A stretch of DNA of 63,371 nucleotides, the filler included, from Octopus bimaculoides (taxonomy: Eukaryota): assembly GCF_001194135.2 (NCBI RefSeq). It is 6 parts of 5 records of this genome, joined end to end, with 100 filler letters (N's around TTAATTAATTAA, not from the genome) between each part and the next. Parts side by side here need not be neighbours in the genome. Positions count along the whole stretch, not along the records: positions 25,879 to 37,237 come from NC_068997.1; 5 more parts are not named here. One strand, given 5' to 3'. The translations under genes were made by a program, and so were the position numbers. Shown piece after piece: positions 25,879 to 36,458 of this stretch; within the stretch, counting starts at the first letter, position 1, and the number at the start of each line of letters is the position of its first letter. Under the pieces are notes generated by a model. That model worked only from the letters and a program-made list of their open reading frames with translations, was not told the DNA's origin and ran no database searches.

Positions 25879-25927
<49 letters not shown>

Positions 25928-26450
25928 ATATTTAGTATCACAACATGGTGAGAGGAAGGAAAATAAGGTTAGAGTGTCTCCACTCACTATGTTGCACTAC
26001 TTAACCATCCTTTCTGATTATGGATTTACAAAAAGAAGGCCTGATCAAACAGGATTTAACTAGACCATCCCACACTCCTGGACATAATGAACAATAACTT
26101 TCTTCCACTGTTTAACCTATATCTCTCCGATGACAGGATACCCAATTTACAGAGTCCTCGCTCGATGTGATACCCCAATAACTGGGATATCCCAGAAACA
26201 GCTGTCGGAGACTATTTTTAAAATTATTTTTACCATTCGTTATGTAGTTAAATTAGATTGAATTAAATTAAATTAAATGTCCTCATCACGCCTTGCCTAG
26301 TTGCTTGCTTTTCCTCTCTATTTTAACCTACACCTACTGGCTCAAAGGGAAGCCACCTTTAGCATAACTATTTAAATTTATATATACATATGTATATGCA
26401 TGAATTTAGTTGTATATATTTATATATATGTGTGTATATATATATGTATG

Positions 26451-26502
<52 letters not shown>

Positions 26503-27319
26503 NNNNNNNNNNNNNNNNNNNNNNNNNNNNNNNNNNNNNNNNNNNNNNNNNNNNNNNNNNNNNNNNNNNNNNNNNNNNNNNNNNNNNNNNNNNNNNNNNN
26601 NNNNNNNNNNNNNNNNNNNNNNNNNNNNNNNNNNNNNNNNNNNNNNNNNNNNNNNNNNNNNNNNNNNNNNNNNNNNNNNNNNNNNNNNNNNNNNNNNNNN
26701 NNNNNNNNNNNNNNNNNNNNNNNNNNNNNNNNNNNNNNNNNNNNNNNNNNNNNNNNNNNNNNNNNNNNNNNNNNNNNNNNNNNNNNNNNNNNNNNNNNNN
26801 NNNNNNNNNNNNNNNNNNNNNNNNNNNNNNNNNNNNNNNNNNNNNNNNNNNNNNNNNNNNNNNNNNNNNNNNNNNNNNNNNNNCACACACACACATATAT
26901 CCATATATGTATATAAAATGTGAATGGTATTATATGATCTTACACAGTTTTAGTCTTCAAATTTGAGAAAGCAATAGTAAAAAATACAAGAAGTTTTTAT
27001 GTGTCATGAATATTTTTTGATAATTTGAATATTTAACAAAACAACTGTTGTGTTGCTAATTGTATTTATAAACCTCTAAACTATCGCAACAGCAGCCCTC
27101 ATCTATTTTACACCTTTCACTACACCCAATCCTGCTGCAACAACAGTTTTTGCCACCACATCTACAACAATCAAACTCATCAAATTTTAAGTGTTAACAA
27201 GTCCAGTGGCGAAAGTGTTCACACTTCCGTCACCGGTTCTGCTACAACCACTACAGTACACCATTTCATCTTTCAGTCACCTTTACCTTATCATATATGC
27301 TTTAAAACGGGTTCGAATG

Positions 27320-27435
27320 CTACTTCTTATTTTTCGTCACAACAACGAAAACAAGTACAACAACAAGAATAGCCAGAATGCAGACAACTCCGATTAGAAC
27401 TCCAAGTGCCACTTTTACTGTTGGGTCAGTTATCG
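27320..27435 (-). CDS. Laccase terminal coding exon: transmembrane helix and short basic tail
   Basis: Strong acceptor (cttttttcttctttatcttttcAG, AG at 27437-27436). Phase 1 joins in frame with the upstream donor, giving ...ENISEH-A-ITDPTVKVALGVLIGVVCILAILVVVLVFVVVTKNKK* (TAG at 27322-27320). The spliced CDS is 2121 nt, 706 aa. Confidence 0.88.
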
Positions 27436-27504
27436 CTGAAAAGATAAAGAAGAAAAAAGAACGATATGGAGTTTATTAGGTAGATACACAAACAACAATT
27501 TATA

Positions 27505-27685
27505 AGGGCACGTGGCCCGATGGTTAGGGGTGTTGCATTCACAATCGCAAGATAGTGGTTTTGATTGCAAGCCCGAAAAAAAAAAGTGGAGTGGCTGTGT
27601 GGTAAGTAGCTTGCTTGCCAACCACATGGTTCCGAGTTCAGTCTCACTGCGAGGCAGCTTGGGCAAGTGTCTTCTACTATAGTTG
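27505..27685 (+). mobile_element. Adjacent SINE heads (C-like, then A) in the laccase intron
   Basis: ggcacgtggcccgatggttaggg head, then ggagtggctgtgtggtaagtagcttgc...ttgggcaagtgtcttctactatag. Confidence 0.7.
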
Positions 27686-28050
27686 GACGGAGGGACCGGT
27701 TAAAATGCTAGGGGTTTGGTTTGGTTCAGACCTCCAAATAAAGAAGAATTGGAGCGAGGTGACGAGCAGTGTGACCCACCTAACTCAGACCTGGTCTGAG
27801 TGGCAGCTATCCCTGAAAAAAAAAGGGCTGAGTTCGCAGGAGTGTTTATCGCTTCTGTGATTATCTACCGCCTAACCGTCGTGCCTTGCCCCCATTCCTG
27901 GCTCATCAAGTTGGAGTAGCTGCTCATCCGCTTTTTGTGGGGTGACAGAAGTCCTATTATAAAGCGCTCTGTCTGCTGCGATCACCCACTATAGCGTGGG
28001 TTAGGGACGCCTTGGCTGTTGATGCAAAGACATGCGCTGAGGCTGTCGAT
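27686..28050 (+). mobile_element. L1/Tx1-clade LINE fragment within the laccase intron
   Basis: WTEGPVKMLGVWFGSDLQIKKNWSEV...WQLSLK(fs)...VFIASVIIYRLTVVP...RFLWGD...CCDHPL resembles the post-RT region of Tx1-like ORF2. It is homologous to 48897-49124. Confidence 0.75.
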
Positions 28051-28224
28051 ATTGGGTTCAAAAACCCATTTGGATAGAAAAAGTCGAAAGCTTTGCATGA
28101 GATCCGAACACACATTTCCATTTATGTGTTTCGAGATCAAGTTCGCAAAAATGAAATATTTCACGTTCTTTCGAAATTTTATCAAATTCTTACAACATGA
28201 ACAATATATAAATTTATGTATATG

Positions 28225-28455
28225 TGTAAGTGTATGTGTGTCTGTGTATGCGCCTTAGTATTTGTCCCCTATCTGACAACCGGAGCTGGTTTGTTTATGT
28301 TCCTTTAACCTAGTGGTTCAACAAAACCGACCGATAGAATTAGTAGCAGAATTAAAAATAAGTGCTAGTATTAATTTGTTTGACCAAATCCTTCAAAGCG
28401 GTGATTCAGTATGGCTGCATTCTAATGACTGAAACACGTAAAAGATAAAAGACAA
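28225..28455 (+). mobile_element. SINE family A 3' half in the laccase intron
   Basis: tgacaaccgg...gaccgatagaa...gtatggctgcattctaatgactgaaacacgtaaaagataaaag. Confidence 0.7.
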
Positions 28456-28559
28456 AGATATAAAAAAAATTAAAAAAAAAAAAACAAAGAAAGAAAGGAA
28501 AGAAAAGAAACGAGATTGCAGAGAAACGATAAAATAAGTTATTGAAAACTATTCCTTAC

Positions 28560-30564
28560 CGTGTTCTGAAATATTTTCATTTCCTTTTTCACACTTATTA
28601 GTATTGTTATTATTAGCATTTTTATCACCAACACCTTTTGTTTCTTCATAATAAACTCCTTTCTCGAAACTTCGACATACAGGGAAATTGTCAGGGATTT
28701 TTGGTAAGTGGGCATAAGATTCGTTAAGAACCAAAGCCATTCCATCTTTACTGTGTAATTCAATATGGCAGTGCATGATCCATACTCCAGGATTATCGGC
28801 CACTATTCTCACTACAACGTATCCACCTGTAGGGACCATAATTGTATCCTTTTGAGGGGCGTTTCGTAAATTCATTCCGGGGATGTTGTCTCCCTCCCAG
28901 TTGTTGTGTGACCAAGCTGCATCGTTACAATAGTTCATTTTCGGATCACCTCTGCAATCAATATCTTTAGTATCATGTATTATTTCTCCCGATGTTTCAT
29001 TGTATTTCGGAAAACCCATTTTAACTACATAAAATGAATGTCCGTGCATGTGTATGGGGTGAGAGAATCCCTTACCTTTTCCCAGGTTTGTCATTACAAC
29101 TTGAATTGTATCACCATGTTTCAGGTTTAATGAGTAAGTACACCGACACACTTTATCAACACCGCATTTGGTATTATCACACAGAGTATCTATTTCATTT
29201 GGTTGTGTTAAAGGGTTTACCGTGGGTTCCACGAACACACGACCATTTACTGATGCTGGTGTGTATCCTGGCTCACCAGGAAAAGCAAAATTTAAAAAAT
29301 ATTCCTCAAACTTCCCAGACTTGAATGGAGGTATAACAACAGGGTAATCAGATTTCAGGTCATCAAACTGTAAACACCGTTTAGTACTTTTCTCGGGATA
29401 ATAAAGAAAGGGACAGTTAAGTAAGACGCAGTTCTTCTGCTGAACACAATCAGAAACTGTGGAGTTGGGGTCTTCGTCCGGTGCACCCTTATAACGAAGA
29501 ATTACTTCAAATGTGTTATTTTTTCCACTTTCCATTGTTTTTCCACGAATCCAATAATTTCCGACAGAGTTATTTGCCTTCAATATAAAGTCAAATCTCT
29601 CACCTGGACTGAGGATGAAATAATCAACACCTATTGGTTTTAGGTCATAACCATCAGAGGCAATGACTACCATCTGGTGACCATCAACAGATACTTCAAA
29701 CGGGTAAAGGGACCCTGCAGCGATCACTCTAAAACGATATTCTTTACCAGATTCTACTTCAAAGGTAGTCAGCGGGGCCCCATTGTGTTTCCCTGATTCA
29801 TCATAATAGCGGCCTCGACCATTCACAAGACCAGAATGGAAATTAAAAAGACTAAAAAGCGCTCCATCAAGAGATTTGGAATTTTCAATGTTTTTACGGT
29901 TCCAATAGAGTCCGAAATCCATTTTTAAATAACTCACATCGGAATCCCAGTTATGGTTGTAGTCTGTTATTAACATCACATGTTCTTCCATTTTAGGGTT
30001 TGCCTTCTCGTGTATTATAAATGCACCAAATAGTCCCATAGTACGTTGTGTCCCAAGATGAGAATGGTACCAAAAGGTTCCAATTTGTGTGACATTAAAT
30101 TCATATCTGAACGACTGACCTGGTTGAATTGGACACTGTGAAACCCAAGGTACGCCATCCATATGAGGTGTTCCTTTTTGATGAATGCCGTGCCAATGTA
30201 TTGTTGTAGCTTCTGAAAATAATTGGTTTTCTACTTCAATGATGATTCTTTGTCCTTTATAAGCTTCTATTGTTGGTCCTGGAACTGTGCCATTAACTGC
30301 AATCACCATAACTGTCTCAGAAAAACCATCCATAGTAATAACTTCATCAGTTGGTATCGGTGGAGCATCCGTAAAATTAGTGACGTCATATCTGTAGAGT
30401 TTTCCATTATATGGTTGTACCAAACTCTTATTAACTAACATAGTTAATTTATAGGAAATTACCAGCTTAAACTCACACTCGTCGTCTTCCATACGACAGC
30501 CATGAGAATAAACTAATGGTGATAAGAGACCCAGGAGGAATATAATTACGTTGAAGTGAACCAT
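28560..30564 (-). CDS. Laccase-like multicopper oxidase, main coding exon (signal peptide plus three cupredoxin domains)
   Basis: Uninterrupted ORF with all four multicopper-oxidase copper motifs: HWHG, WYHSH, HPIHMHGH and HCHIELHSKDGM (Met axial ligand). The likely start is the ATG at 30564 (MVHFNVIIFLLGLLSPLVYSHG, signal-peptide-like), 24 nt downstream of a splice acceptor (tttacattttgttatttcAG, AG at 30590-30589). The exon ends at a phase 1 donor, CAC G|GTAAGG (GT at 28559-28558). Confidence 0.95.
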
Positions 30565-31164
30565 TGTTGAACCAGTGTGTGCAGATATCTGAAATAACAA
30601 AATGTAAATATGAGAAACACTGAAATCATCAAAGACGATGTGACAATTAAATCATGAAATATTTGTATGTTTTAAAGACGAAAGAATACCAACATATTAA
30701 AGAGAAGAAATGAAAATAAAACTCTGTGTGACAGGCAGACGACAGGGAGATCAATATTGTTTTGTTAGTAGGACATTTCAGCTGGAACAAATTTTTATCA
30801 GAAATTGTTGGAAACTTAAGAATTTCTGGTTACAGTCTTTTGTTTCTCTGTCCTGTATAGCTTACGAGATGATCTTTGTCAACAGTTGGTGACTAACCCT
30901 CAGGAATTAACGCTGGGAATATCTCAAGTATACCTGCCCAAGCAGAACTACAGGATGAAAAATTAATCCAGTGAGTGTCACTGTGTGATACGGTGTGGTC
31001 CAGGGATCTTGGTAAATCACTAAACATGGATGCCGGAGATTGATTACATAATCTGGTACAAGTTTGTTCGTTTTATTCTTGCGGCTGTCGTTTACTAAGT
31101 AAAATATTTTTGCAGGTGACAGTTTATTAGTTGAGTATATGTAGTAATGAGGAGACCCTCAAAT

Positions 31165-31312
31165 CCTGAATATCCCCGAGAACTACGCTAAGGGTACACG
31201 CGTCTGTGGAGTGCTCAGCCATTTGCACGTTAATTTCACGAGCAGGCTGTTCCGTTGATCAGATCAACTGGAACCCTCGACGTCGTAAGCGACGGAGTGC
31301 CAACACAGACAC
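31165..31312 (+). mobile_element. SINE family D 3' fragment
   Basis: tgaatatccccgagaactacg...gagcaggctgttccgttgatc...gacggagtgccaac. Confidence 0.85.
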
Positions 31313-31751
31313 AACACACTTATTGGTAAAATTATTCTCTGAAAATACTTTTATTTCTCTCAGTTAATCTCGAATATGACAAGTCCGGCGTAGCTTATGT
31401 TTTGTTTATGCAGTCCCATTGTTGGAAGTTAGATAGCAGCCTCTGTTTATGAGGTTGGCACACTTATGACGTTTGTTATTTGAATGCGTATGGGCGGAAG
31501 TCTCCGACATAGCAGAGTATTTCTTGATATAAAGTAGGTTAGGTTAGCCGGCGAATTGATAGAATCGTTAGAACTAGTAGGATAGAATTCCCTATACAGG
31601 AATTCTGAGTTCAAATCCTGCCGAAGTTCTCGTTTCTATTATCTTTTCGGAGGATGATAAATAATAAGTTAAAGTAATTTAAGGATTTAAAAAATGAAAT
31701 GAAATGAATGTAAATCACACGCGCACGCACACACACACATATATATATACG

Positions 31752-32008
31752 CGTGGCTGAGTGGTTAGGGCATTCGGCTCGCGATCGTAGCGTCGCGAGT
31801 TCGATTCCTGGCAACGTGTTGTGTCCTTGAGCGAGACATTTTTATTTCACGTTGCTCCAGTCTACTCAGCTGGCAGAAATTGGTTGTACCAGTAATTACA
31901 AAAGGGCCAGCCTTGTCGCACTCTGGGGTCGATTTGCTCGACTATAAAGGCGGTGCTCTAGCATGGCCGAAGTCAAATGACTGAAACAAGTAAAAAAGTA
32001 AAAGAGTA
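31752..32008 (+). mobile_element. Chimeric SINE (C-type head, D-type middle, A-type tail)
   Basis: gtgttgtgtccttgagcgagacatt...ctactcagctggc (C), aaagggccagccttgtcgcac (D), then tggggtcgatttgctcgactataaaggcggtgct...gaaacaagtaaaa (A). Confidence 0.7.
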
Positions 32009-32078
32009 AGTGTCATCATAGTCTGCTGGCTGTCATCATACTCCACAAAATAAAGCTGGAATAGTAATAATAATGATA

Positions 32079-32291
32079 ATCTTTTGTACACTAGGCACAA
32101 GGCCCGAAATTTTGGGGAGGGGGCCAGCCGATTAGATCGATTCCATTACGCAACTGGTACTTAATTTATCGAACCCGAAAAGATGAAAGGCAAAGTCGAC
32201 CTCAGCGGAATTTGAACTAAGATCGTAGTAACAGACGAAATAGCGCTAAGCATTTCGCCCAGCGTGCTAACGATTCTGCCAGCACGCCGCC

Positions 32292-32293
<2 letters not shown>
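32079..32293 (-). mobile_element. SINE family B, full length
   Basis: Reverse-complement homology to 35621-35838; CpGs retained. Confidence 0.85.
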
Positions 32294-32356
<63 letters not shown>

Positions 32357-32410
32357 GATGATGATGATGATGATGATGATGGTAGGGATGATGATGATGA
32401 TGATGATGAT
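32294..32410. repeat. (TAA)n(TGA)n microsatellite between two SINE B copies
   Basis: Direct inspection. Confidence 0.9.
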
Positions 32411-32575
32411 AAGGCCTGAAATTTTGTGGGGTGCGGACTAGTCGATTACGTTGACCACTGGTAGTAAATTTATCGAACCCGAACGGTGAGAGGCTAAGTC
32501 GGCCTCGGCGGAATTTGAACTCAAAACGTAATGACGGACGAAATGCTGCTAAACATTTTATCCGGCGTCCTAGGG
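32410..32575 (-). mobile_element. SINE family B, partial
   Basis: ggcggaatttgaactcaaaacgtaa...aaatgctgctaa; its tail runs into the (TGA)n/(TAA)n array. Confidence 0.7.
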
Positions 32576-32657
32576 CTATAAGACTGAGGAAAGGTCTAAT
32601 ATAATAATATATTCTGATACATATATACATACATGTGTGTGTGTGTATGTGTGTATG

Positions 32658-32690
<33 letters not shown>

Positions 32691-32971
32691 TCATATATGT
32701 ATATATATGTGTGTGTGTGCACGTGTGTCTATGTTCTCCTTTGTATGTGCGTGTTTGCGTATATGAGTGTATGAGCGCATATATCTATATACTTATATAT
32801 ATATATGTATACNNNNNNNNNNGTGCGTGTTTGCGTATATGAGTGTATGAGCGCATATATCTATATACTTATATATATATATGTATACACACACACATAT
32901 ATATATTTATATATATGTAAACACATACATGCACACATTCATACATACGCACACATACATACATACACATA

Positions 32972-33002
<31 letters not shown>

Positions 33003-35197
33003 GGAAATAATTCGAAGTGTCTATTGCTGAATAGAAAGAACTCAGTACAGAATATGAGTAGAGTGACGAGCCTATTTCCGTACGATAAAATCGATATGCG
33101 CAAGATGTCTTTCATATTTTTTCTATAATAATCAGCATATGACGAACGAAGTCGGGAAAATAGTAACGAAAGAGGATTCAATATGCGTGTATATATATNN
33201 NNNNNNNNNNNNNNNNNNNNNNNNNNNNNNNNNNNNNNNNNNNNNNNNNNNNNNNNNNNNNNNNNNNNNNNNNNNNNNNNNNNNNNNNNNNNNNNNNNNN
33301 NNNNNNNNNNNNNNNNNNNNNNNNNNNNNNNNNNNNNNNNNNNNNNNNNNNNNNNNNNNNNNNNNNNNNNNNNNNNNNNNNNNNNNNNNNNNNNNNNNNN
33401 NNNNNNNNNNNNNNNNNNNNNNNNNNNNNNNNNNNNNNNNNNNNNNNNNNNNNNNNNNNNNNNNNNNNNNNNNNNNNNNNNNNNNNNNNNNNNNNNNNNN
33501 NNNNNNNNNNNNNNNNNNNNNNNNNNNNNNNNNNNNNNNNNNNNNNNNNNNNNNNNNNNNNNNNNNNNNNNNNNNNNNNNNNNNNNNNNNNNNNNNNNNN
33601 NNNNNNNNNNNNNNNNNNNNNNNNNNNNNNNNNNNNNNNNNNNNNNNNNNNNNNNNNNNNNNNNNNNNNNNNNNNNNNNNNNNNNNNNNNNNNNNNNNNN
33701 NNNNNNNNNNNNNNNNNNNNNNNNNNNNNNNNNNNNNNNNNNNNNNNNNNNNNNNNNNNNNNNNNNNNNNNNNNNNNNNNNNNNNNNNNNNNNNNNNNNN
33801 NNNNNNNNNNNNNNNNNNNNNNNNNNNNNNNNNNNNNNNNNNNNNNNNNNNNNNNNNNNNNNNNNNNNNNNNNNNNNNNNNNNNNNNNNNNNNNNNNNNN
33901 NNNNNNNNNNNNNNNNNNNNNNNNNNNNNNNNNNNNNNNNNNNNNNNNNNNNNNNNNNNNNNNNNNNNNNNNNTATATATATATATATATATACGTACAT
34001 GTATGTATGTATGTATGTATGTATGTATGTATCTATCTATCTATATAAATATGCACATATATGTATATAACTATACATATATATATGTGTGCGTGTGTTT
34101 GCATGTATGTATGTATGTAGGTAGGTATATGTGTGTATATGTGTATATGTATACATGTTTTCCATGAGAAGTTATCATTTATAAAATCAATTATCAATTA
34201 ATATGAATTTTAGCAGATTACATGATTAACATTTACATGGATCACTTGGACAGTGACGCTGTGTGTGTGTGTGTGTGTGTGTGNNNNNNNNNNNNNNNNN
34301 NNNNNNNNNNNNNNNNNNNNNNNNNNNNNNNNNNNNNNNNNNNNNNNNNNNNNNNNNNNNNNNNNNNNNNNNNNNNNNNNNNNNNNNNNNNNNNNNNNNN
34401 NNNNNNNNNNNNNNNNNNNNNNNNNNNNNNNNNNNNNNNNNNNNNNNNNNNNNNNNNNNNNNNNNNNNNNNNNNNNNNNNNNNNNNNNNNNNNNNNNNNN
34501 NNNNNNNNNNNNNNNNNNNNNNNNNNNNNNNNNNNNNNNNNNNNNNNNNNNNNNNNNNNNNNNNNNNNNNNNNNNNNNNNNNNNNNNNNNNNNNNNNNNN
34601 NNNNNNNNNNNNNNNNNNNNNNNNNNNNNNNNNNNNNNNNNNNNNNNNNNNNNNNNNNNNNNNNNNNNNNNNNNNNNNNNNNNNNNNNNNNNNNNNNNNN
34701 NNNNNNNNNNNNNNNNNNNNNNNNNNNNNNNNNNNNNNNNNNNNNNNNNNNNNNNNNNNNNNNNNNNNNNNNNNNNNNNNNNNNNNNNNNNNNNNNNNNN
34801 NNNNNNNNNNNNNNNNNNNNNNNNNNNNNNNNNNNNNNNNNNNNNNNNNNNNNNNNNNNNNNNNNNNNNNNNNNNNNNNNNNNNNNNNNNNNNNNNNNNN
34901 NNNNNNNNNNNNNNNNNNNNNNNNNNNNNNNNNNNNNNNNNNNNNNNNNNNNNNNNNNNNNNNNNNNNNNNNNNNNNNNNNNNNNNNNNNNNNNNNNNNN
35001 NNNNNNNNNNNNNNNNNNNNNNNNNNNNNNNNNNNNNNNNNNNNNNNNNNNNNNNNNNNNNNNNNNNNNNNNNNNNNNNNNNNNNNNNNNNNNNNNNNNN
35101 NNNNNNNNNNNNNNNNNNNNNNNNNNNNNNNNNNNNNNNNNNNNNNNNNNNNNNNNNNNNNNGTGTGTGTGTACATATATACATATATATATGTATG

Positions 35198-35240
<43 letters not shown>

Positions 35241-35620
35241 TCACACACAGACACATATATATAGTGAGAGTGAGAGTGAGAGGTAGAGTGAGAGATTTAC
35301 GCACCTTATTTTCTTACTCTCTCATTTCTTTGTTCCCCCCTCCTCTTATTACATTGTATGTCAGATAGTGTCAAACACCGCTTGAGACATAACTTGTCTC
35401 ATTCTTCTACTCTTTCACAAGGAATATTAAGCTTTCGGTGAACGACGTTATTCAGATATTTGCATTATTTCACGAAGATATGTGTCATTTATTTTGTACA
35501 ATATATTATTATTATTTACTTATGTTTTATTAAAATATGCTTCGACTGCGATTAAGCCGTAAGAGCAGGTCTCATTTTGCATTTAAAAAAAAAATATTGT
35601 TTTTACTATGAGTTGCAGCT

Positions 35621-35838
35621 GTAAGGCAGTGAGGTGGCAGAATCGCTAAAACGCCGGGCGAAATGCCTAGCAGTATTTCGTCTGGTGCTGCGTTCTGAGT
35701 TCAAATTCCTGTCGAGGTCAACTTTGCCTTTCATCCTTTCGGGGTCGATAAATTAGTTACCAGTCAAGTACTGGGGTCGATGTTATCGACTTACCCCCAC
35801 CCTCAAAGATTTCAGGCCTTGTGCTTATAGTAGAAAGG
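35621..35838 (+). mobile_element. SINE family B with (GTT)n tail
   Basis: gaggtggcagaatcgctaaaacgccgggcgaaatgc...ccttgtgcttatagtagaaagg. Confidence 0.85.
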
Positions 35839-35841
35839 ATT

Positions 35842-35877
<36 letters not shown>

Positions 35878-36331
35878 ATTGTTATAGTTGCTTATTTGCT
35901 GTATTTTAGGGTATCCGTCATCAATATAACTGCTTTGTGTTTGCGCGTGTGTCTGTGAGGGGGCGGGATCGTGTACGTGCACGTGCTGGGTGTTTAATTT
36001 GAAATCGAATTATTCAGTTTAGAATATGTAAATTAAATAACTTAGTTAATTATCAAATTTTCAATTTGAATACATTAGATATATATATATATATATATAT
36101 AACAATTAGAAAATGGAGGATAATATGCTGAACCCAACTACTTGCAGACAATGTATCCCGTTGAATTCATTAATTTAATTCGTAGCTAAAGTGACAAAAA
36201 AAGAAAGAAAAAAAGGAAGAAAAAAAAAAACCAAAGCACAGGTGTCCATTACAAACTATGTTATTTTGCCAACCTGGTTTACATATAGAAGTACAAAGTA
36301 CATAAGGAATTAGAGGATGAACAGAAGTTTT

Positions 36332-36458
36332 ATCTTACAGCTGTTTCGGCCTAGTTTTAGCATGCCCCATTCTATTCGAATATTTCTTGCCAGAGTGATT
36401 ATCGGATGACATGTTGAAATGGACTTACATGCCCGAACCGCTAGGCCTCTTCAGAGAT
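36332..36458 (-). ncRNA. Type I minimal hammerhead ribozyme (Penelope-associated type), intact core
   Basis: Minus strand reads AUCU-CUGAAGA-GGCCUAG-(86 nt loop II)-CUAGGCC-GAAA-CAGCUG-UA-AGAU. All conserved core bases are present, with a 7-bp helix II, palindromic helix III (ACAGCUGU) and 4-bp helix I. Predicted cleavage is after GUA, between 36336 and 36335. Confidence 0.75.

What the first reader, a model, noticed from the sequence alone, without database searches (positions are those of the whole stretch)
27320..30564. The laccase is a membrane-anchored type I protein through a TM exon absent from the ORF track
Seen: a donor three codons before the apparent stop joins in phase, across a 1124-nt repeat-filled intron, to an exon encoding a ~25-residue hydrophobic helix followed by TKNKK (positive-inside). 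The T1 copper site has a Met axial ligand. Established: single-pass three-domain multicopper oxidases include yeast Fet3p (a ferroxidase), whereas most laccases are secreted. Inference: this could be a cell-surface oxidase for metal handling, pigmentation/melanisation or sclerotisation of hard tissue such as the beak.
Basis: partly seen in the sequence, partly recalled or inferred. Interest (0 to 1): 0.7.

Follow-up and report, generated by a model that had tools for sequence, protein, structure and literature searches.

The report
Octopus laccase-like oxidase with membrane anchor

Summary
On the minus strand a 2005-nt exon (30564..28560) ends at a CACG|GTAAGG donor. A 1124-nt phase-1 intron follows, then a TTTTCAG|CG acceptor and a 116-nt exon (27435..27320). 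That exon encodes AITDPTVK, a 25-residue hydrophobic helix, and TKNKK-stop.

The spliced 706-aa product is identical to RefSeq XP_014788227.1 (LOC106882161, Octopus bimaculoides). The read-through product is not in the collection.

- **Ortholog and paralog:** the O. vulgaris ortholog and an O. bimaculoides paralog keep the donor, acceptor and phase.
- **More distant species:** cuttlefish, abalone and the annelid Owenia have the same layout: one roughly 2-kb exon, a phase-1 intron, and a short exon for the membrane helix (TM exon).
- **Selection:** exon 2 is under purifying selection (dN/dS 0.09 and 0.20).
- **Family:** 70 of the 120 best homologues carry a C-terminal TM helix with more positive charge after it. 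All 120 have Met as the T1 axial ligand.
- **Structure:** AlphaFold gives three confident cupredoxin domains, a disordered linker and a terminal helix.
- **Closest structures:** a termite laccase, then ascorbate oxidase. Fet3p is distant, and its Asp409 position is Lys/Arg here.

No RNA or protein evidence was available. The proposed roles (metal handling, pigment, beak) remain untested.

Verdict: real, already annotated, low novelty.

The parts
28560..30564 (-). Coding exon 1 (2005 nt). It encodes residues 1-668 plus the first base of codon 669: signal peptide, three cupredoxin domains and the linker.
   Evidence: It is identical to the first 2005 nt of the public CDS of LOC106882161. The O. 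vulgaris ortholog starts at the same Met.
30502..30564 (-). Predicted N-terminal signal peptide, residues 1-21 (MVHFNVIIFLLGLLSPLVYS|HG).
   Evidence: The 19-residue hydropathy mean is 1.96 at residues 1-19. The model shows a helix at residues 2-13 with low pLDDT at 14-20. The segment is conserved in orthologs and paralogs. The cleavage site is inferred from the -3/-1 rule; no SignalP was available.
30001..30315 (-). Cupredoxin domain 1 (Pfam Cu-oxidase_3), with the HWHG (H123, H125) and HSH (H167, H169) copper motifs.
   Evidence: E 4.4e-45. The His residues are invariant in 67 relatives.
29482..29841 (-). Cupredoxin domain 2 (Pfam Cu-oxidase).
   Evidence: E 3.1e-30.
28720..29166 (-). Cupredoxin domain 3 (Pfam Cu-oxidase_2), with HPIHMHGH (H502, H505, H507) and the T1 motif.
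   Evidence: (E 4e-36).
28738..28773 (-). T1/trinuclear copper motif HCHIELHSKDGM (H598, C599, H600, H604, M609); the axial ligand is Met.
   Evidence: Read directly from the sequence. Met is present in 120 of 120 homologues and is invariant in alignment A1.
28561..28665 (-). Low-complexity, Asn/Lys/Glu-rich linker, residues 634-668, between the catalytic body and the membrane helix.
   Evidence: pLDDT is below 50 for residues 634-668. Linker length and sequence vary among relatives; the median distance from the T1 Met to the TM start is 52 residues.
28549..28551 (-). In-frame TAG reached only if the intron is not removed; the read-through product ends ...SEHGKE.
   Evidence: The read-through protein is not in the protein collection.
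27436..28559 (-). Phase-1 intron of 1124 nt, GT (28559-28558) to AG (27437-27436).
   Evidence: The donor and acceptor are conserved in the O. vulgaris ortholog and in paralog LOC106881493. A phase-1 intron sits at the same place in cuttlefish, abalone and Owenia.
27320..27435 (-). Terminal coding exon 2 (116 nt including the TAG at 27322-27320), residues 669-706.
   Evidence: It is 95.7% identical to O. vulgaris with no indels, against 88-89% with indels in the flanks. dN/dS is 0.09 against the ortholog and 0.20 against the paralog.
27338..27412 (-). Transmembrane helix, residues 677-701 (VALGVLIGVVCILAILVVVLVFVVV).
   Evidence: Hydropathy reaches 3.65. The AlphaFold helix spans 673-705 with block pLDDT of 79-95. 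The equivalent helix is present in 70 of 120 homologues.
27323..27337 (-). Short basic cytoplasmic tail TKNKK, residues 702-706.
   Evidence: Across the family, net charge after the TM averages +2.6 against -0.9 before it, and is higher after in 66 of 71.

Best explanation
**What it is.** This is the annotated Octopus bimaculoides gene LOC106882161. It has two coding exons and encodes a 706-residue three-domain multicopper oxidase of the animal laccase-like type.

**How it is made and placed (topology and activity are inferred).**

- The N-terminal signal peptide directs the protein into the secretory pathway.
- The three cupredoxin domains carry the full set of ten His and one Cys copper ligands and a Met-ligated T1 copper. 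They fold on the luminal, later extracellular, side.
- A disordered linker of about 35 residues follows.
- The last 38 residues come from a separate terminal exon joined across a phase-1 intron. They supply one transmembrane helix and a four-to-five-residue lysine-rich cytoplasmic stub.

**Result.** The product is a type I, cell-surface or endomembrane-tethered oxidase. It should oxidise small reducing substrates at the T1 copper and reduce O2 to water at the trinuclear cluster.

**Substrate.** The class is unknown. An organic reductant (phenol, catechol, amine or ascorbate) is more likely than Fe(II).

**Context.** The architecture is ancestral in Lophotrochozoa and not special to this gene.
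For: **Shown**

- The splice geometry and reading frame are as described.
- The spliced product is identical to XP_014788227.1 / UniRef A0A0L8FPK2. The public CDS range (3245 nt) is identical to window 30564..27320.
- Pfam finds Cu-oxidase_3, Cu-oxidase and Cu-oxidase_2.
- The copper ligands and M609 are invariant in 67 relatives.
- The O. vulgaris ortholog (91% identical) has the same junction, SEH|AITDPTV.
- The same layout occurs in an O. bimaculoides paralog, Acanthosepion pharaonis, Haliotis rufescens and Owenia fusiformis: one roughly 2-kb exon, a phase-1 intron of 783-4657 nt, and a terminal TM exon of 107-179 nt.
- Exon 2 is more conserved than its flanks and free of indels. Its dN/dS is 0.09 (4 synonymous, 1 non-synonymous change) against the ortholog and 0.20 (13 synonymous, 9 non-synonymous) against the paralog.
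- 70 of the 120 best homologues have a C-terminal TM helix. Across the 70 and the window protein, the median TM length is 24 residues and the median tail 23. Positive-inside holds in 66 of 71.
- The AlphaFold2 model has pLDDT 89 and pTM 0.84, a disordered stretch at 634-668 and a helix at 673-705.
- The best structural matches are termite laccase BP76 (8r7i) and ascorbate oxidase (1aoz).

**Inferred**

- Signal-peptide cleavage, the N-out topology and the substrate class are all inferences.
Against: - No transcript evidence was obtainable. No RNA-derived contig carries this protein, so use of the junction in vivo rests on the RefSeq model and on conservation.
- Two O. vulgaris paralog models (P0123 and P0124) were annotated as ending ...SEHGKE, the read-through form. 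A secreted isoform, or a different annotation choice, therefore exists in databases.
- No canonical poly(A) signal is visible downstream of exon 2 within the piece, though a 381-N gap lies there.
- No signal-peptide, TM or GPI predictor was available. Topology rests on hydropathy and charge.
- Fifty of the 120 homologues lack a TM helix. Some of these are truncated models, so the anchor may be dispensable for some family members.
Confidence: 0.85

Rival explanations
1. The main product is the unspliced, secreted 671-residue protein ending ...SEHGKE. The downstream hydrophobic exon is used rarely or never in this gene, or only as an alternative isoform.
For: The ORF continues three codons past the donor to a TAG. 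Two O. vulgaris paralog gene models end at ...SEHGKE. Fifty of the 120 homologues have no TM helix.
Against: - Exon 2 is under purifying selection in the spliced frame and is free of indels, unlike its flanks.
- The donor, acceptor and phase are conserved out to an annelid.
- The read-through protein is absent from the protein collection, while the spliced one is present.
- There is no AATAAA or ATTAAA for about 1.08 kb after the read-through stop.
- The conserved GKE-stop is simply the GGTAAGGAATAG donor region read as codons.

A minor secreted isoform made by intron retention is not excluded.
Confidence: 0.08
2. The C-terminal hydrophobic segment is a GPI-attachment signal that is cleaved off. 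The mature oxidase would then be lipid-anchored, as has been predicted for insect MCO1.
For: Insect MCO1 has a C-terminal 'transmembrane region' and is predicted to be GPI-anchored (PMC4593997). In octopods the tail after the hydrophobic run is only 4-5 residues. Small residues (A, T, D) lie upstream of the helix.
Against: - The hydrophobic run is 25-26 residues, which is long for a GPI signal.
- It is followed by three lysines out of five residues.
- Relatives in other molluscs, nemerteans and annelids have hydrophilic, basic tails with a median of 23 residues and up to 41. Such tails are incompatible with a GPI signal, and the exon is homologous across the family.
- No GPI predictor was available, so this was not formally tested.
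Confidence: 0.06
3. The hydrophobic exon is a chance open frame in AT/GT-rich intergenic DNA, and the splice sites are fortuitous.
For: Short T/G-rich stretches translate readily into Val/Leu/Phe runs. Tandem Repeats Finder reports a weak 9-nt periodicity, ACAACAACG, at 27339-27364.
Against: - The spliced product matches the public model exactly.
- Substitutions between species are mostly synonymous.
- The same exon, phase and position occur in five other genes from four other species.
- The AlphaFold helix has high confidence.
Confidence: 0.01

Closest known systems
RefSeq XP_014788227.1 / LOC106882161 'laccase-like' (Octopus bimaculoides); orthologs CAI9735105.1 (O. vulgaris) and XP_029646917.1 (O. 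sinensis)
   Same: It is identical in sequence (706 of 706 residues), with the same two coding exons and the same CDS range. The orthologs are about 91% identical and share the junction and TM tail.
   Different: Nothing differs; this is the same gene. No paper in the searched library mentions it.
Lophotrochozoan 'laccase-like' three-domain multicopper oxidases with a C-terminal anchor (molluscs, nemerteans, annelid Owenia); an unnamed clade seen only as database models
   Same: These proteins are 44-58% identical. All copper ligands and the axial Met are conserved. They share the layout of one large exon, a phase-1 intron and a terminal TM exon, and they are positive-inside.
   Different: Octopod members have a very short tail of 4-5 residues, against a family median of 23. 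About 40% of listed relatives lack the anchor; some of those are truncated models.
Insect multicopper oxidase-1 (MCO1)
   Same: It is an animal three-domain MCO with a signal peptide and a C-terminal hydrophobic anchor region (PMC4593997). The nearest solved structure to the octopus protein is also from an insect: termite laccase BP76, 8r7i.
   Different: MCO1 is about 800 residues and is predicted to be GPI-anchored. Orthology to the octopus gene was not tested. Its reported activities (ferroxidase or ascorbate oxidase) are not established for the mollusc clade.
Yeast Fet3p (PDB 1ZPU), a type I membrane ferroxidase
   Same: It has three cupredoxin domains, a signal peptide and a single C-terminal TM helix. 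It matches with sequence E 9.5e-42 and Foldseek E 8e-39.
   Different: - It is only the 43rd structural match, at 22% identity.
- The position of Fe(II)-binding Asp409, four residues before the T1 His (PMC9880977), is Lys here and Lys/Arg in 53 of 67 relatives.
- By my own recollection, Fet3p has a non-coordinating Leu at the axial T1 position, whereas this protein has Met.
- No Ftr1-like partner was examined.
Plant ascorbate oxidase (PDB 1AOZ) and fungal or plant laccases
   Same: These share the three-domain fold and the copper motifs. Ascorbate oxidase is the second-best structural match (E 3e-44). By my own recollection, it also has a Met axial ligand.
   Different: These are secreted, soluble enzymes without a membrane anchor, at 24-28% identity.

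Membership tests
Three-domain multicopper oxidase (laccase / ascorbate oxidase / ferroxidase superfamily) | Three cupredoxin domains in the order Cu-oxidase_3, Cu-oxidase, Cu-oxidase_2 | tested here: met
   Pfam E-values are 4e-45, 3e-30 and 4e-36. The AlphaFold model has pLDDT 89, and Foldseek E is down to 1e-46 against solved laccases.
Three-domain multicopper oxidase (laccase / ascorbate oxidase / ferroxidase superfamily) | Ten His and one Cys copper ligands in the motifs HxH, HxH, HxxHxH and HCHxxxH | tested here: met
   H123, H125, H167, H169, H502, H505, H507, H598, C599, H600 and H604 are all present. All are invariant in 67 relatives.
Three-domain multicopper oxidase (laccase / ascorbate oxidase / ferroxidase superfamily) | Copper-dependent oxidation of a substrate coupled to four-electron reduction of O2 | not testable with these tools
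   This needs an enzyme assay on the expressed ectodomain.
Lophotrochozoan membrane-anchored laccase-like MCO clade | C-terminal hydrophobic helix after the T1 motif, followed by a net-positive tail | tested here: met
   The window protein has a 25-26-residue hydrophobic run and the tail KNKK. Of the 120 best homologues, 70 carry the helix; positive-inside holds in 66 of the 71 anchored proteins, window protein included.
Lophotrochozoan membrane-anchored laccase-like MCO clade | The helix is encoded by a separate terminal exon behind a phase-1 intron, and the rest of the CDS lies in one roughly 2-kb exon | tested here: met
   The window shows this layout, as do five comparator genes from octopus, cuttlefish, abalone and an annelid.
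Type I single-pass membrane protein | Cleavable N-terminal signal peptide | tested here: inconclusive
   The N-terminal hydrophobic stretch (hydropathy 1.96) is followed by VYS|HG and is conserved in orthologs. No dedicated predictor and no experiment were available.
Type I single-pass membrane protein | Exactly one further TM helix, with the positive side cytoplasmic | tested here: met
   Only two segments exceed hydropathy 1.6 (residues 1-20 and 669-706). The tail charge is +3 against -1 before the helix.
Fet3p-type ferroxidase | Acidic Fe(II)-binding residues equivalent to E185, D283 and D409 around the T1 site | tested here: not met
   The D409 equivalent, four residues before the T1 His, is Lys498 here and Lys/Arg in 53 of 67 relatives. 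E185 and D283 could not be mapped because no residue-level Fet3p alignment was obtainable.
GPI-anchored protein | C-terminal hydrophobic signal with no hydrophilic cytoplasmic tail, preceded by a small-residue omega site | tested here: inconclusive
   The window tail is short (TKNKK) but strongly basic. Homologous exons in other phyla encode tails of up to 41 residues. No GPI predictor was available.

The most novel reading that the evidence does not exclude
The anchored laccase-like oxidases of molluscs, nemerteans and annelids may form an ancient, functionally uncharacterised class of cell-surface oxidases. They share a fixed two-exon design and a basic residue where ferroxidases carry Asp409.

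Two further possibilities follow.

- The clade may be homologous to insect MCO1.
- Skipping or using the terminal splice might switch the enzyme between a secreted form (...GKE-stop) and a tethered form.

No paper in the searched library describes a membrane-anchored mollusc laccase.
Probability: 0.2. Interest if true: 0.4.

Novelty: already known. Interest (0 to 1): 0.15.

Why it matters
**For the scan.** This is a positive control. A reader working from raw sequence reconstructed, to the base, a gene model that RefSeq already holds.

**For the biology.**

- Octopus 'laccases' should be thought of as tethered ectoenzymes and not as soluble haemolymph enzymes.
- Two O. vulgaris paralog models that stop at ...SEHGKE probably miss their last exon.
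- The anchor and the intron in front of it are old, shared by molluscs and annelids. The whole clade appears to have no published functional study in the searched library.

**Limits.** None of this changes current understanding of multicopper oxidases.

Tried and rejected
- **Transcript search by protein fragment:** a search with the last 127 residues, meant to find transcript-derived fragments spanning the junction, returned only two unrelated partial mollusc proteins.
- **Exact look-ups:** these show the spliced protein only on the genome assembly, with no short RNA-derived contigs. Junction usage therefore could not be shown directly.
- **Transposon domains in the intron:** a Pfam scan of four intron ORFs found nothing above noise. 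ARAGORN found no tRNA-like element. 'Repeat-filled' could therefore only be partly checked, using BLAST against about 46 kb of other octopus DNA.
- **Poly(A) signals:** the scan was uninformative. One AATAAA lies 40 nt before the acceptor, and none lies after exon 2 within the piece, which contains an N gap. The next is about 2.85 kb downstream in the public record.
- **Fet3p residues:** a residue-level alignment to Fet3p for E185 and D283 could not be obtained, because the PDB tool prints only the top alignments. Only the D409 position was assessed, by numbering relative to the T1 His.
- **ER-retrieval motif:** I considered whether the tail is a KKXX/KXKXX signal and rejected it. The tail is T-K-N-K-K, with Asn and not Lys at position -3, so it does not fit the canonical pattern (my own knowledge of the motif).
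- **Literature:** searches for mollusc or cephalopod membrane laccases and for the gene identifiers found nothing specific.
Full report
**What is in the sequence**

The piece (window 25879-37237) carries one long ORF on the minus strand, 28549..30600, 683 codons from a TTG. Pfam finds the three multicopper-oxidase domains Cu-oxidase_3, Cu-oxidase and Cu-oxidase_2, with E-values of 4e-45, 3e-30 and 4e-36.

Reading the minus strand and splicing it in a script confirms each element of the finding.

- The ORF ends GAA CAC GGT AAG GAA TAG.
- The exon can end at 28560 (CACG|GTAAGG), after the first base of a codon.
- The intron 28559..27436 is 1124 nt and ends in a pyrimidine tract and TTTTCAG.
- The next exon, 27435..27320, continues the frame as A-ITDPTVK-VALGVLIGVVCILAILVVVLVFVVV-TKNKK-stop.
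- From the ATG at 30564 the product is 706 residues.
- Only two segments are strongly hydrophobic: residues 1-20 and the last exon, where the 19-residue Kyte-Doolittle mean reaches 3.65.
- The T1 motif is HCHIELHSKDGM, so the axial ligand is Met609.

**It is an annotated gene**

An exact-sequence look-up finds the spliced 706-residue protein in the public collection. It is XP_014788227.1, LOC106882161 of Octopus bimaculoides (UniRef A0A0L8FPK2, 'Laccase'). The unspliced product ending GKE is not there.

The genomic look-up places the gene on CM046617.1. The called gene range is 3245 nt and is identical to window 30564..27320. The piece lies between N runs of that record. The exon is missing from an ORF list only because such a list cannot splice.

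**Is the splice real? Comparative evidence**

- **O. vulgaris ortholog.** The protein (CAI9735105.1) is 91% identical, 706 residues, and has the same junction SEH|AITDPTV. At the DNA level the donor AACACG|GTAAGGAA and the acceptor TTATCTTTTCAG|CGATAA are conserved, and the intron is 4657 nt.
- **O. bimaculoides paralog.** LOC106881493 lies about 65 kb away on the same chromosome. It has the same phase-1 junction with a 2480-nt intron.
- **Conservation of exon 2.** Between O. bimaculoides and O. vulgaris, exon 2 is 95.7% identical with no indels. The 150 nt before it are 89.4% identical and the 150 nt after it 88.0%, with many gap columns.
- **Selection on exon 2.** Four of the five substitutions are synonymous, giving dN/dS 0.09. 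The whole CDS gives 0.27. Against the paralog there are 13 synonymous and 9 non-synonymous changes, dN/dS 0.20 at dS 0.6. The exon is therefore selected as coding sequence in exactly this frame.
- **More distant species.** Gene models from the cuttlefish Acanthosepion pharaonis, the abalone Haliotis rufescens and the annelid Owenia fusiformis were mapped back onto their own DNA. All show one exon of about 2.0 kb encoding everything up to the linker, then a phase-1 GT-AG intron (3043, 1945 and 783 nt), then a 107-179-nt terminal exon encoding the hydrophobic helix and tail. The intron in front of the anchor exon is thus ancient in Lophotrochozoa.

**The anchor is the family norm**

- Of the 120 best homologues, 70 have a segment with hydropathy of at least 2.0 after the T1 motif. 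They come from cephalopods, bivalves, gastropods, a chiton, nemerteans and Owenia. All 120 have Met at the axial position.
- In the anchored set plus the window protein, the median helix length is 24 residues and the median tail 23 residues, with a range of 0-41.
- Net charge in the ten residues after the helix averages +2.6, against -0.9 before it. It is higher after the helix in 66 of 71 proteins.
- Octopods have unusually short tails: KNKK, KQRK and RKQKN.
- The long hydrophilic tails elsewhere in the family argue for a true transmembrane helix and against a GPI signal.

**Structure**

AlphaFold2 was run on a 67-sequence alignment. It gives mean pLDDT 89 and pTM 0.84.

- The catalytic body is confident.
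- Residues 634-668, the Asn/Lys/Glu-rich stretch, are below pLDDT 50.
- Residues 673-705 form one helix with block pLDDT of 79-95.

Foldseek against the PDB ranks the termite Neocapritermes taracua laccase BP76 (8r7i) first, at E 1.4e-46. Ascorbate oxidase 1aoz comes next, followed by many fungal and plant laccases. Fet3p (1zpu) is 43rd. Sequence search gives the same order: laccases and BP76 at 1e-65, ascorbate oxidase at 1e-54, Fet3p at 1e-41.

**Function**

One test bears on the ferroxidase analogy.

- Fet3p oxidises Fe(II) through E185, D283 and D409, and D409 is hydrogen-bonded to the T1 ligand His413 (PMC9880977).
- D409 therefore lies four residues before the first His of HPxHxHGH.
- In the octopus protein that residue is Lys498, in the context GKGKGFS-HPIHMHGH.
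- Across 67 relatives it is Lys in 41 and Arg in 12, and is not acidic in any of the listed majority states.
- This weakens a Fet3p-like iron site. The equivalents of E185 and D283 could not be mapped.

My reading is that this is a tethered oxidase of small organic reductants. That is an inference.

Membrane-anchored three-domain oxidases are also known in insects. MCO1 has a signal peptide and a C-terminal transmembrane region and is predicted to be GPI-anchored (PMC4593997).

**What remains open**

I found no transcript-level evidence for this gene.

- The exact protein occurs only on the genome assembly.
- A fragment search for junction-spanning products found nothing useful.
- Two O. vulgaris paralog models end at ...SEHGKE, the read-through form. 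Given the conservation above, these are more likely incomplete annotations than true secreted enzymes. A minor intron-retaining secreted isoform cannot be excluded.
- Poly(A) signal scanning was uninformative.
- 'Repeat-filled' describes the intron only loosely. There are an A-rich and a TG-rich tract and three short segments with non-collinear copies. About half of the intron aligns collinearly with the O. vulgaris intron.

**Literature**

Searches of the library found no paper that mentions this gene. None describes a membrane-anchored mollusc or cephalopod laccase. Laccase-type phenoloxidase activity in molluscs is discussed for the haemolymph of Biomphalaria, with a remark on residual activity from cell membranes (PMC4722754).

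**Verdict**

The functional speculation is open, and the ferroxidase variant is disfavoured. The gene model is already public and the architecture is the family norm, so novelty and interest are low.

Noticed in passing
L001 region / proteins P0123 and P0124 (O. vulgaris CAI9735110.1, CAI9735107.1): Two O. vulgaris paralog gene models end at ...SEHGKE. That is the read-through of the conserved GGTAAGGAATAG donor, without a TM exon. They probably lack their last exon in the annotation.
   Followed up: partly
L002 16534-16613 and L002 6001-10613; L006 (CM046617.1 49.05-49.15 Mb): The window gene, LOC106881493 and a further 746-residue multicopper oxidase gene lie within about 100 kb on one O. 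bimaculoides chromosome, forming a tandem cluster. LOC106881494 isoform X1 (873 aa, P0001) looks like a fusion of one and a half paralogs.
   Followed up: partly
window 31315-31668: This upstream block is 91.8% identical to O. vulgaris (L001 1815-2167). It is separated from the conserved gene-proximal block (31169-28534, 93.7%) by DNA that does not align. It may be a 5' UTR exon or a regulatory element.
   Followed up: no
window 28738-29070 (protein residues 494-501): The loop before the T1 His is G-x-G-K/R-G-W/F-S/A in nearly all 67 relatives. A conserved basic residue sits where Fet3p has Asp409. This could bear on substrate charge preference.
   Followed up: partly
window 36968-37237 (-): An ORF at the edge of the piece (...LLEIEDTVLNMGGSPLPVYGLLS...) resembles by eye the N-terminal region of Helitron/PIF1-type helicases. 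No Pfam family matched.
   Followed up: partly
window 26503-26883, 32813-32822, 33199-33973, 34284-35162: Assembly gaps (N runs) are flanked by TA/TG/CA microsatellites. A long AAC/GAT (poly-Asn/Asp-like) microsatellite lies at 32264-32419. The same gaps are present in the public record.
   Followed up: no
window 27472-27477 (-): The only AATAAA on the gene strand between the read-through stop and the end of the piece lies 40 nt upstream of the acceptor. It is conserved in O. vulgaris but not in the paralog, so it is probably coincidental.
   Followed up: partly
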